A stretch of 64,000 nt of DNA from Octopus bimaculoides (lineage: Eukaryota): contig NC_068983.1 of the NCBI RefSeq assembly GCF_001194135.2, forward strand, positions 155,624,647 through 155,688,646, in the 5' to 3' direction. Shown piece after piece: positions 7,760 through 8,946 of this stretch; within the stretch, counting starts at the first letter, position 1, and every line of letters begins with the position of its first letter. The position numbers and the translations under genes are program-made. The notes beneath the pieces were generated by a model. That model made no database searches. It was not told the origin of the DNA and worked only from the letters and a program-made list of their open reading frames with translations.

Positions 7760-7962
7760 TATAATTGTCACTAAACGTGAGTAGGCGTTAGTAAACACCT
7801 ACATTGCTTGAAATAACAGCTAAACTGCTCTAATGCTGTAGTTAACGTAATTGAATGAAAACATATACACCAACAGGGACCGTAATAGACCGAAAAAATG
7901 TAGAATCTATTGCCTCATCAGTTAAGCCTGCTCGATTGTTTGGCTCTTTTCGGACTCGCTTC
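7760..7962 (-). mobile_element. Left arm of inverted repeat; PLE-like terminal repeat with deleted hammerhead
   Basis: Reverse complement of 8740-8946; keeps CTGATGA (7915-7921, minus) but lacks about 37 nt covering stem II 3' strand, GAAA and helix III. Confidence 0.75.
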
Positions 7963-7964
7963 AC

Positions 7965-8680
7965 CATTAGTATTTATGTTTTCGTCAACCAACCATGTTT
8001 CATTCAACTCTGGTGGAACCTTTCCCATCCTTACTCTGACAACTCGCTTGCCACAGTATATCGGTAGGAGCACCCACACTACAGTTTTTTTTATTTTATC
8101 AGTGGAGTCCTTTATCGCTTCGCCTTCGCTTGGAATCGCACCTCTACTGTGCCAAATCTTCTTCCTCTTGTTATAAACGTCGTAAGCTTTTTGACCTGTT
8201 TTAGACACTTCTCTGTCTCTTCTATGGATGGAATTTCGATTTTCTTTGTCAAAACTTTCGGCGTTTTGTAAATCACTGTTCGTTTCCTCACTCCATTTGT
8301 TAAATCGAGCGGGGACGTGAATTTAAGGTTGTGGACTTCCTTTTCCAGTTGTTTCCCGCATTCTTTCAGCTTTTCCGGCTCAATTTTAACTTCTCGAACC
8401 TCCGAAATTTCTACTTCAATTCCTCTGCCAATTGCAGCTGCATAACTGTGGCTCTTCGCTGGCTCAGTCTCCATTACACTTCTTTTCGCCGGTTCTCCCA
8501 TAAAGGGGGAAAAAAACCCACAATTCTACAAAAACTCGTTAGTACAAACAGCAATTTCAACAAGGAACAAACGTGGTACACCCACGAGGGGAGACCTTTA
8601 ACAATTACAACAATATCACAACTTACTTCAACGTAACCATAAAAAACACACTGTCACAACCAAAAAATTCCTCGCGGAAT
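7965..8680 (-). mobile_element. 5' UTR and N-terminal ORF1 (gag-like) fragment of a non-LTR retrotransposon
   Basis: ORFs 8112-8501 and 7918-8208 join via one frameshift: SYAAA...FITRGRRFGTVEVRF..SEGEAI..VLLPIYCGKRVVRVRMGKVPPELNETWLV. Similar motifs at 18200-18500 and 42250-43140; the latter is linked to a Tx1-like RT. Confidence 0.6.
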
Positions 8681-8739
8681 GATCTAGTGATTCACGATCT
8701 AGTGATTCGTGATTTAGTGATTCCGTATGATCTGCGATT

Positions 8740-8946
8740 CGCGAAGTGAGTGCGGAAAGAGCCTAACAATCGAGCGGGCTTAATTGATGAGGCAACGGAA
8801 TTTGCTGAAACTGACGTCAGTATTAATAATTCTTGATCGGCACTTTTTGGACGATTATGGTCCCTGTTAGTGTATGTTTTCATAGCTCTTATTCCTAGCA
8901 ATGTAGGTGTTTCGTAACATCGTAGTCACATTTAGTGACAATTATA
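8740..8946 (+). mobile_element. Right arm of inverted repeat; PLE-like terminal repeat with hammerhead
   Basis: Reverse complement of 7760-7962; both outer ends read TATAATTGTCACTAAA. Confidence 0.75.
8780..8826 (+). ncRNA. Type I hammerhead ribozyme motif (C3U variant)
   Basis: UUAA-UUGAUGA-GGCAA(CGGAAU)UUGCU-GAA-ACUGACGUCAGU-A-UUAA; helix III is a perfect 12-nt palindrome; GUA cleavage triplet. Confidence 0.7.

What the first reader, a model, noticed from the sequence alone, without database searches (positions are those of the whole stretch)
7760..8946. 1.19-kb unit: diverged 200-bp inverted hammerhead arms enclosing the 5' end of a LINE ORF1
Seen: 7760-7962 and 8740-8946 are diverged inverted repeats that both start TATAATTGTCACTAAA, so the unit looks like a TA-flanked TIR transposon. 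However, the right arm contains a well-formed hammerhead and the left arm its deleted relic. The 720-bp interior is a LINE 5' UTR plus about 180 codons of ORF1, broken by only one frameshift and fused in frame into the left arm. Established: LINE insertions normally keep the 3' end and lose the 5' end, so an isolated 5' piece is unexpected. Inference: capture by template switching during PLE reverse transcription, or a later deletion of a full LINE.
Basis: partly seen in the sequence, partly recalled or inferred. Interest (0 to 1): 0.78.

Follow-up and report, generated by a model that had tools for sequence, protein, structure and literature searches.

The report
Inverted ribozyme repeats enclosing LINE fragment
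Two decayed, oppositely oriented copies of a small hammerhead-ribozyme repeat in an octopus-like genome enclose the front end of a LINE retrotransposon gene; this is most likely an old chimeric retrotransposition product of the Penelope/retrozyme kind and not a cut-and-paste transposon, and whether it ever spread as one unit could not be tested.

Summary
The inverted repeat is real. Arms 7760-7962 and 8743-8946 are 85% identical over 168 aligned nt, with identical 16-nt outer ends.

The right arm carries a three-helix type I hammerhead-like motif (8780-8826, + strand). It is the only such motif in 128 kb, with none in 100 shuffles. It is not well formed: C3 is U, 10.1-11.1 is G.U, and Rfam gives no hit. 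The left arm keeps a canonical CUGAUGAG but has lost the 3' half of the motif.

The 780-nt interior, on the minus strand, holds a 5'UTR-like stretch and 171 codons of an RRM-type ORF1. There is one frameshift (8131-8132) and no stop. Full-length relatives add a CCHC knuckle.

An arm relative in Octopus bimaculoides lies head to tail, keeps helix II through four compensatory changes, and matches the left arm about 25-45 nt beyond the inverted-repeat end. The "TA-flanked TIR" is therefore an illusion.

The layout fits Penelope-like/retrozyme insertion: 3' ends outward, a one-sided tail, microsatellite flanks. My best reading is reverse transcription of a LINE-retrozyme chimeric RNA (confidence about 0.45). 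Nested insertion plus deletion remains open.

Interest is modest.

The parts
7720..7759 (-). One-sided 3' extension ('tail') of the left arm, beyond the end of the inverted repeat. It abuts a (CA)n/(TG)n microsatellite (7600-7712). Its outer limit is uncertain; the extension is about 25-45 nt.
   Evidence: Similar to both tandem copies of the O. bimaculoides relative: ATTCTCTTTTTTGG vs ATTTTTCCTTTTTGG, then ACATTGC..TTATA. The right arm has no such sequence after 8946.
7760..7962 (-). Left arm. The ribozyme-sense strand is the minus strand and its 3' end points outward (left). It has lost 30+5 nt that held the 3' half of the hammerhead, and it differs from the right arm by a 33-nt indel (7823-7856).
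7914..7921 (-). Canonical CUGAUGAG box, the relic of the hammerhead core with C3 intact. Read in the ORF1 frame it gives the TGA TGA stops.
7963..7986 (-). Junction stretch between the end of ORF1 homology and the start of the inverted repeat. It is either arm sequence 5' of the point where the right arm is truncated, or filler.
   Evidence: Weak similarity (AAATACTA..ACTAAT) to the L001 unit. No significant ORF1 profile signal.
7987..8501 (-). N-terminal 171 codons of an RRM-type ORF1 (type I LINE ORF1p architecture), 3'-truncated after ...PPELNETWLV. No in-frame stop. A second ATG at 8474 aligns with the start of the relatives.
   Evidence: AlphaFold2 model with mean pLDDT 72; best PDB fold matches are RRMs.
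8131..8132 (-). The single frameshift in ORF1 (...TVEVRF | SEGEAIKD...).
8502..8742 (-). 5'UTR-like leader upstream of the ORF1 start. It ends in 3-4 copies of a 15-nt tandem repeat (8681-8725) that abut the right arm.
   Evidence: (family D5)
8743..8946 (+). Right arm. The ribozyme-sense strand is the plus strand and its 3' end points outward (right). It is 5'-truncated relative to the left arm and has no tail.
8780..8826 (+). Type I hammerhead-like motif: UUAA / UUGAUGA / GGCAA-CGGAAU-UUGCU / GAA / ACUG-ACGU-CAGU (a 12-nt palindrome) / A17 at 8822 / UUAA. C3 is replaced by U and 10.1-11.1 is G.U, so it is probably inactive.
   Evidence: Helix II covaries with the L001 relative: 5/5 pairs kept, 4 with changes on both sides. 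No Rfam hit.
8925..8939 (+). Small hairpin GUCAC-AUUUA-GUGAC seven nt before the end of the right arm. It is kept in the left arm (7767-7781, 4 bp) and in the L001 relative (GUCA..UGAC). It may be a recognition element next to the reverse-transcription start; this is inference.
   Evidence: Read directly from the sequence.

Best explanation
The unit is an old, decayed retrotransposition product of the Penelope-like-element (PLE) / non-LTR-retrozyme kind.

The arms. They are two copies of a roughly 330-nt non-coding repeat that ancestrally carried a type I hammerhead ribozyme. The copies lie with their 3' ends outward and their 5' ends inward. This is the arrangement expected when a PLE-type RT/GIY-YIG enzyme nicks and extends both strands of the target (inferred from the layout and from published PLE biochemistry):
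- One cDNA (right arm, 8946->8743) started at the inner of two start sites and stopped after 204 nt.
- The other (8742->7720 as read on the minus strand) started about 25-45 nt further 3' in the template. This left a one-sided 'tail'.

The cargo. After copying the repeat, the second cDNA continued into a LINE mRNA, from ORF1 codon 171 back to the 5' leader. Either the template was already a LINE-promoter-driven read-through transcript of a repeat inserted in a LINE ORF1, or the RT switched templates. This step is inferred and not shown.

After insertion. Both arms and the cargo decayed. The left arm lost the 3' half of the ribozyme, the right arm mutated C3 to U, and ORF1 took one frameshift. 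Nothing suggests a present function.
For: - The inverted repeat and the ribozyme motif are real and non-random.
- Ribozyme ancestry of the family: the left relic and the O. bimaculoides relative both have the canonical CUGAUGAG. Helix II has the same length (5 bp) and loop length (6 nt) in the window and in L001, but a different sequence, with 4 compensatory pairs. Helix III is a palindrome, as described for metazoan type I / PLE hammerheads (PMC4209133).
- The family is not a TIR element. The L001 relative is head-to-tail with a period of about 328 nt, inside the 170-400 nt range of tandem non-LTR retrozymes (PMC7229834), and is flanked by (GT)n and (TA)n.
- The layout matches published PLE signatures. 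An inverted 5'-truncated copy next to a longer copy, an optional 30-40-bp tail at one end only, and a bias for microsatellite targets are described in PMC8557442. Both DNA strands being cleaved and extended, and two adjacent internal RT start sites that define the tail, are described in PMC11167929. Here both 3' ends point outward, only the left arm has an extension of about 25-45 nt, and (CA)n-type repeats flank the unit.
- The cargo starts with a complete ORF1 N-terminus plus a leader and stops abruptly at codon 171. No ORF1 C-terminus or other remainder of the LINE lies beyond the left arm or anywhere else in the window.
- PLEs are reported to retrotranspose foreign transcripts in trans (cited in PMC8557442).
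Against: - Only one relative of the arms could be examined, and its ribozyme is also degenerate (G12->A).
- The right-arm motif lacks C3, is not the favoured fold and gets no Rfam score.
- No PLE RT/GIY-YIG ORF was found among the window ORFs tested. No ORF2 was linked to this ORF1 family.
- The tail rests on short, A/T-rich similarity.
- The arms show more indels per nt than the cargo: five in about 400 nt against one frameshift in 513 nt. This would fit arms older than the cargo. The absence of stops is still compatible with equal age (P about 0.18).
- Copy number of the whole unit and of its junctions is unknown.
Confidence: 0.45

Rival explanations
1. Nested events. An inverted pair of retrozyme/PLE-type repeats was already present, joined 5' end to 5' end. 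A full-length LINE then inserted between or within them in minus orientation. A later deletion removed everything from ORF1 codon 171 to the LINE 3' end.
For: The cargo looks somewhat less damaged by indels than the arms, which fits a younger insert. LINE insertions and deletions are common in this repeat-rich window.
Against: It needs a rare full-length insertion exactly at the arm junction, plus a deletion whose end falls within about 25 nt of the arm boundary. No poly(A)/tail, no LINE target-site duplication and no LINE remainder is visible.
Confidence: 0.2
2. An internally deleted LINE. The 'arm' is the normal 3' end of this LINE family (3' UTR with terminal hairpin). The unit is then a 5'+3' deletion derivative moved by the LINE's own RT, and the right arm is a second, extremely 5'-truncated copy inserted head-on.
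For: It would explain simply why a LINE 5' end is joined to the arm. The arm has a small 3' hairpin (8925-8939), followed in both window copies by TG/TGTA-type repeats, as at the 3' ends of stringent-type LINEs and their SINEs (the comparison rests on my own knowledge).
Against: The L001 relative is a head-to-tail tandem with no LINE body, and its sense-strand flank is (AC)n, not (TG)n. Hammerhead motifs and a one-sided tail are PLE/retrozyme marks, not LINE marks (PMC4209133, PMC8557442). No ORF2 or 3' UTR of this LINE family could be recovered for comparison.
Confidence: 0.12
3. A cut-and-paste TIR element (MITE-like, TA target duplication) with 200-bp terminal inverted repeats that acquired a LINE fragment internally.
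For: The 16-nt ends are identical and the TATA at each end is compatible with TA duplication.
Against: Similarity between the left arm and the L001 relative runs past the supposed terminus. The relative is tandem, not inverted. No transposase lies inside the unit. The ribozyme core and the covarying helix II are unexplained by this model. The TA cannot be told apart from the palindromic end itself.
Confidence: 0.08
4. A local inverted duplication created during DNA repair (fold-back or template-switch replication) of a single repeat copy lying next to a LINE fragment, with no retrotransposition logic behind the arrangement.
For: Single locus; no second copy seen in the window.
Against: It does not explain the different outer end points (a tail on one side only) or the match of the whole layout to PLE insertions.
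Confidence: 0.05

Closest known systems
Penelope-like element insertions (pLTR with an adjacent inverted 5'-truncated copy and a one-sided 30-40-bp tail)
   Same: Inverted copies with 3' ends outward. One copy is strongly 5'-truncated. There is an extension at one end only. Microsatellites flank the unit. A hammerhead motif lies in the repeated part (PMC8557442, PMC11167929, PMC4209133).
   Different: No RT/GIY-YIG ORF lies between the repeats; the body is a LINE 5' fragment. No autonomous partner was identified. The tail is supported only by one diverged relative.
Metazoan non-LTR retrozymes (tandem 170-400-nt repeats with type I hammerheads, expressed as circRNAs; PMC7229834, bioRxiv 10.64898/2026.07.22.740005)
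   Same: Unit size of about 330 nt, low GC, type I motif with an open stem I and a palindromic helix III, and head-to-tail arrangement in the O. bimaculoides relative.
   Different: The window copies are inverted, not tandem, and they carry foreign cargo. All three ribozyme copies examined are mutated. No RNA evidence could be obtained.
Type I LINE ORF1p (RRM plus CCHC knuckle; Khazina and Weichenrieder classes as summarised in PMC5203782)
   Same: The fragment has an RRM-like fold. Full-length relatives continue into a CCHC knuckle and a K/E-rich tail. The family is multi-copy in octopus data.
   Different: This copy is cut before the knuckle. No Pfam family matches the fragment. No ORF2 (RT/endonuclease) was linked, so the LINE clade is undetermined.
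Composite or transducing retroelements (SVA-type composites, L1 5' transduction); this comparison rests on my own knowledge
   Same: Two unrelated retroelement pieces are joined in one RNA-derived insertion. The upstream piece could supply a promoter.
   Different: Here the 3' module is a ribozyme repeat presumably read by a PLE enzyme. There is no evidence that the composite amplified.

Membership tests
Hammerhead ribozyme, type I | Conserved core: C3-U4-G5-A6-N7-G8-A9, G12-A13-A14, A15.1-U16.1, H17 | tested here: not met
   The right arm has 12 of the 13 fixed positions, but C3 is U (8784). The left relic has C3 but lacks G12-H17. The L001 relative has C3 but G12->A. No examined copy has a complete core.
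Hammerhead ribozyme, type I | Three helices around the core, with stem I open and helices II and III closed by loops | tested here: met
   Stem I is 4 bp, helix II is 5 bp with a 6-nt loop, and helix III is 4 bp with a 4-nt loop. This is the only such site in 128 kb, with none in 100 shuffles. Helix II is kept through 4 compensatory changes in L001.
Hammerhead ribozyme, type I | Match to the curated covariance models (Rfam Hammerhead families) | tested here: not met
   No hammerhead hit at the gathering score or at E<=10, even on a 101-nt stretch.
Hammerhead ribozyme, type I | Self-cleavage | not testable with these tools
   Needs in vitro transcription of monomer and dimer constructs.
Non-LTR retrozyme | Head-to-tail tandem copies of a 170-400-nt unit with one type I hammerhead each | tested here: inconclusive
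   The window copies are inverted and separated by 780 nt. The O. bimaculoides relative is tandem with a period of about 328 nt, but only about 1.15 units are seen before an assembly gap.
Non-LTR retrozyme | Expression as small linear and circular RNAs | not testable with these tools
Penelope-like element insertion | Terminal repeats in direct or inverted order, with an inverted 5'-truncated copy next to a longer copy and 3' ends outward | tested here: met
   The sense strands of the two arms point outward. The right arm stops at 8743, while the left copy runs further 5'.
Penelope-like element insertion | Optional 30-40-bp tail at one end only | tested here: inconclusive
   The left arm matches the L001 relative for about 25-45 nt beyond the inverted-repeat end, and the right arm does not. 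This rests on one diverged, A/T-rich comparison.
Penelope-like element insertion | ORF with PLE-type RT and GIY-YIG endonuclease between the repeats (autonomous member) | tested here: not met
   The interior encodes only an ORF1 fragment. No RT/GIY-YIG was found among the window ORFs tested. At most the unit is a non-autonomous product.
LINE type I ORF1p | RRM domain | tested here: met
   AlphaFold2 model with mean pLDDT 72. The best PDB matches are RRMs (La, NONO; E = 3e-3, probability 1.0). No Pfam hit.
LINE type I ORF1p | CCHC zinc knuckle after the RRM | tested here: inconclusive
   Present in the full-length relatives P0017 (Pfam zf-CCHC) and L001 8477-9496. Absent here because the copy is truncated at codon 171.
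LINE type I ORF1p | ORF2 with endonuclease and RT downstream in full-length members | tested here: inconclusive
   None of the loci recovered (L001-L010) continues into an ORF2. They are short or broken by gaps.
TIR (cut-and-paste) DNA transposon / MITE | Family members end at the same terminal inverted repeats, flanked by a target-site duplication | tested here: not met
   Similarity to the only relative runs through the supposed terminus, and that relative is tandem. The TA is part of the palindromic end and cannot be shown to be a duplication.

The most novel reading that the evidence does not exclude
The 1.2-kb arrangement is a member of an amplifying composite family and not a one-off accident. 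In that family a ribozyme-bearing, PLE-mobilised repeat has acquired a LINE 5' leader (internal promoter) and ORF1 RRM module as its own 5' end. Such an element would be transcribed like a LINE but copied like a Penelope element, an SVA-like hybrid between two retroelement classes in cephalopods.
Probability: 0.1. Interest if true: 0.6.

Novelty: new variant of a known kind. Interest (0 to 1): 0.35.

Why it matters
If the chimeric reading holds, this locus is a fossil showing that the Penelope/retrozyme copying machinery can pick up another retroelement's 5' end. That would bear on two questions: how PLE enzymes choose and switch templates, and how composite non-autonomous elements arise. It would also add cephalopods to the animals in which hammerhead-bearing repeats have been examined; the retrozyme and PLE-hammerhead papers read here do not cover them. 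As it stands, this is one decayed copy with no sign of present function, in a genome that is about two-thirds repeats. Its practical value is mainly for repeat annotation: these arms should not be called TIRs or a MITE.

Tried and rejected
(1) Are the arms ORF1-derived? The ORF1 profile alignment ran on past WLV and placed the ribozyme box (aaC TGA TGA Ggc) where relatives have LNWWG, at nearly the same spacing. The extension adds only about 2 bits, and the tail alone scores below zero. I treat it as coincidence.

(2) Does a SINE interrupt the right arm's tail? The sequence after the SINE-like block (9340-9470) matches the left tail only through a T-run. Rejected.

(3) My first read-through of ORF1 was joined at the wrong place and was corrected from the alignment. 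The word-indexed protein search found nothing with it. With the profile it found only three Logan fragments.

(4) I mined arm copies through their antisense ORFs in the protein collection: no hits. An exact-pattern scan of metagenome contigs for the arm core gave nothing.

(5) Eleven look-ups of ORF1 proteins (the window's own 129-aa ORF and ten relatives) were made to fetch octopus DNA. One gave a 21-kb O. bimaculoides locus (L001). Four gave 1-2.4-kb Logan contigs with no arm relatives. Six were not on record.

(6) Rfam hits to mir-297/466 and similar at 7600-7710 are far below the gathering scores and lie in the (CA)n microsatellite. They are low-complexity artefacts.

(7) The PDB sequence search with the ORF1 profile gave no hit.

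(8) No tRNA-like head lies in 7000-10000.

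Full report
THE OBSERVATION

Reading the region and searching for repeats confirm two inverted arms, 7760-7962 and 8743-8946. They match in three collinear blocks of 89%, 81-83% and 84-86% identity. A gapped global alignment gives 143 matches in 168 aligned positions (85%, JC distance 0.166), with five indels. The outer 16 nt of the two arms are identical (TATAATTGTCACTAAA). 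Neither the arms nor the interior recur elsewhere in the 64-kb window, by BLAST or by an nhmmer profile. The interior is 780 nt, not 720.

THE HAMMERHEAD

On the + strand of the right arm the sequence can be laid out as a type I hammerhead:
- stem I: UUAA (8780-83) with UUAA (8823-26)
- core: UUGAUGA (8784-90)
- helix II: GGCAA / UUGCU (8791-95 / 8802-06) with a 6-nt loop
- GAA (8807-09)
- helix III: ACUG-ACGU-CAGU (8810-21), a perfect 12-nt palindrome
- A17 at 8822

A descriptor that I wrote requires the core with any base at position 3, helices of at least 4, 4 and 3 bp, A15.1-U16.1 and H17. It hits this site only on both strands of the window and hits nothing in 100 shuffles. The motif is therefore not chance.

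The motif is not 'well formed', for four reasons. Position 3 is U where every active hammerhead has C paired to G8. The 10.1-11.1 pair is G.U. The ribozyme fold is worth -2.2 kcal/mol against an MFE of -8.1. Rfam reports no hammerhead family at the gathering score, or at E<=10 on 1.5 kb, or on 101 nt.

The left arm, read on the minus strand, keeps the canonical CUGAUGAG (7921-7914) and the 5' strand of helix II. The family evidently had C3, and the right-arm copy is a mutated one.

THE INTERIOR

The coding strand is the minus strand. Two reading frames carry the signal: 8501->8133 and 8130->7987, joined by a frameshift at 8131-8132. Together they give 171 codons without a stop.

An exhaustive HMMER search found 29 relatives. 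The best has E = 2e-29 and spans the frameshift. With the corrected join, the closest relative is 59% identical. It is encoded in Octopus bimaculoides chromosome CM046615.1, which places the window in or near the octopods.

Relatives start at the position of the second ATG (8474), so the N-terminus is complete and 8502-8742 is leader. Longer relatives continue into ...LNWWGY..., a second domain, a CCHC zinc knuckle (Pfam zf-CCHC in P0017) and a K/E-rich tail. An AlphaFold2 model of the fragment (mean pLDDT 72) finds RRMs as its best PDB matches. RRM plus CCHC is the type I LINE ORF1p architecture (PMC5203782). No Pfam family matches the fragment. I could not link any member to an ORF2, so 'LINE ORF1' is well supported by architecture but the clade is open.

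Significant homology stops at ...ETWLV (7987). The frame then runs 22 more codons into the arm and ends at TGA TGA, which is the ribozyme box itself. That 'in-frame fusion' has no weight. The ORF1 profile gains about 2 bits from it, and the tail alone scores below zero. An apparent match of LN**G to the relatives' LNWWG is therefore treated as coincidence.

No ORF1 C-terminus lies beyond the left arm or anywhere else in the window.

WHAT THE ARMS ARE

The O. bimaculoides locus fetched for the ORF1 relative happens to hold a diverged relative of the arms (L001 4128-4519; 72-79% in the best blocks; nhmmer E = 1e-59 with a profile that includes it). It bears on the arms in three ways.

First, it is arranged head to tail. 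The unit starts again after about 328 nt, and the array is flanked by (GT)n and (TA)n.

Second, its similarity to the window's left arm does not stop at 7760. It continues through ATTCTCTTTTTTGG and, in the second copy, ACATTGC..TTATA. That is about 25-45 nt further, up to the (CA)n microsatellite. The right arm has no such continuation. So the shared 'terminus' is simply where the shorter copy ends, and the TA-flanked-TIR appearance is an illusion.

Third, its ribozyme region has CUGAUGAG followed by G-CUUU / AAAG-C with a 6-nt loop. The helix length and loop length are the same as in the window, but the sequence differs. All five pairs are kept in both sequences and four have changes on both sides. 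Slid controls pair at only 20-50%. With two sequences this is modest evidence, but it is the kind expected of a real helix II. The L001 copy has G12->A, so it too is dead.

FIT TO KNOWN SYSTEMS

Metazoan type I hammerheads with a short palindromic helix III occur in PLE pseudo-LTRs and in dispersed copies, sometimes as pairs 100-700 bp apart on opposite strands (PMC4209133). They also occur in tandem 170-400-nt non-LTR retrozymes, including in molluscs (PMC7229834), which a recent preprint derives from PLE pLTRs (10.64898/2026.07.22.740005).

PLE insertions typically carry an inverted 5'-truncated copy next to the main copy and an optional 30-40-bp tail at one end only. They also favour microsatellite targets (PMC8557442). 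A purified PLE enzyme cleaves and extends both DNA strands and starts reverse transcription at two adjacent internal sites, whose spacing is the tail (PMC11167929).

The window unit has all of these marks. Both arms have their ribozyme-sense 3' ends outward. One arm is cut short at its 5' end (8743). Only one arm has the extra 3' stretch. CA/TG-type repeats lie at both sides. Octopus genomes hold PLEs as well as L1-Tx1, CR1, RTE and Dong-R4 LINEs (PMC13282606).

MECHANISM

I therefore read the unit as one PLE-type insertion in which the longer cDNA continued from the repeat into a LINE mRNA. It entered at ORF1 codon 171 and ran back to the leader.

Two routes could produce this. The template may have been a read-through transcript from a LINE whose ORF1 had been hit by the repeat. 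Alternatively, the RT may have switched templates. The data cannot separate these routes.

- Shown: the layout, the ribozyme ancestry, the non-TIR nature of the ends, and the ORF1 identity and its truncation.
- Inferred: the enzyme, the single-event origin, and the chimeric RNA.

Age. If the arms were identical at insertion, each is about 0.08 substitutions per site from the ancestor. On the octopus repeat time scale quoted in PMC13282606 this is of the order of 20 My. This is a rough figure. Simulated neutral decay at that level leaves the 513-nt ORF without a stop in 18% of trials. The cargo's good state is thus compatible with equal age, although the arms carry more indels per nt than the cargo.

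RIVALS

(a) Nested full-length LINE insertion between pre-existing inverted arms, followed by a deletion. This is possible and not excluded, but it needs two well-placed events and leaves no tail or target-site duplication.
(b) The arm is the LINE's own 3' end and the unit is an internally deleted LINE. This is attractive for its simplicity and because of the small 3' hairpin. It is contradicted by the tandem, LINE-less relative and by the PLE-type marks. It cannot be tested without a full-length LINE.
(c) A TIR element. This is contradicted as described above.
(d) A repair-generated inverted duplication. This does not explain the one-sided tail.

LIMITS

No PLE RT/GIY-YIG ORF was seen among the larger window ORFs.

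VERDICT

This is a real and correctly spotted structure. It is most likely an old, inactive chimeric product of hammerhead-repeat (PLE/retrozyme-type) retrotransposition that carries a LINE 5' end. That makes it a variant of known things, of modest interest unless the junctions turn out to be multi-copy.

Noticed in passing
window 8947-9385: A SINE-like block lies directly to the right of the unit. Its module 9255-9380 recurs at least 8 times in the window at 77-88% identity, in both orientations. ARAGORN finds no tRNA-like head. The 10 nt between the arm and this block (TGTATGTGTG) look like a microsatellite remnant.
   Followed up: partly
window 7600-7712 and 9555-9680: Compound (CA)n/(TG)n/(TATG)n microsatellites bracket the unit plus the SINE-like block. 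Rfam E-value hits to mir-297, mir-466 and similar fall here, far below the gathering scores, and are low-complexity artefacts.
   Followed up: yes
window 8681-8725: Three 15-nt tandem repeats (GATCTAGTGATTCAC and variants), plus a degenerate fourth, lie at the very 5' end of the LINE-like leader and touch the right arm. Whether they are a normal LINE 5' feature or were made at the junction is unknown.
   Followed up: no
window 7914-7921 (minus strand): Read in the ORF1 frame, the ribozyme box gives L N stop stop G. ORF1 relatives have the conserved LNWWG 21 codons after WLV, and here the spacing is 20 codons. Statistically this is weak (about 2 bits), but it is a curious coincidence.
   Followed up: yes
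window 2463-2969 (-), 334-606 (-), 58432-58740 (-): Tc1/mariner transposase remnants: Pfam HTH_48 at E = 1e-21, and HTH_Tnp_Tc3_2.
   Followed up: partly
window 54869-55222 (-), 49400-51200 (-), 37420-38390 (+), 53388-53930 (-): Decayed reverse-transcriptase-type ORFs of other retroelements. One has a zf-RVT hit at E = 7e-6. Others have RT-like motifs by eye, including a shared ...IPLIVGALG...KIALLGTAHILRK C-terminal module at 49412-49861 and 53388-53930. None is linked to the unit.
   Followed up: partly
window 16-18 kb, 20-22 kb, 32-34 kb, 56-60 kb: Blocks with about 20% GC that produce long spurious ORFs in all frames. They are long A/T-rich simple repeats.
   Followed up: no
L001 8462-8905 and 9896-10432: In the O. 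bimaculoides locus an ORF1 C-terminal part (with a CCHC knuckle) lies upstream of a separate ORF1 N-terminal part, with an assembly gap between them. The N-terminal copy is cut by a microsatellite at almost the same point (...EAWLM) where the window copy ends (...ETWLV). This could be coincidence or a fragile or preferred site.
   Followed up: no
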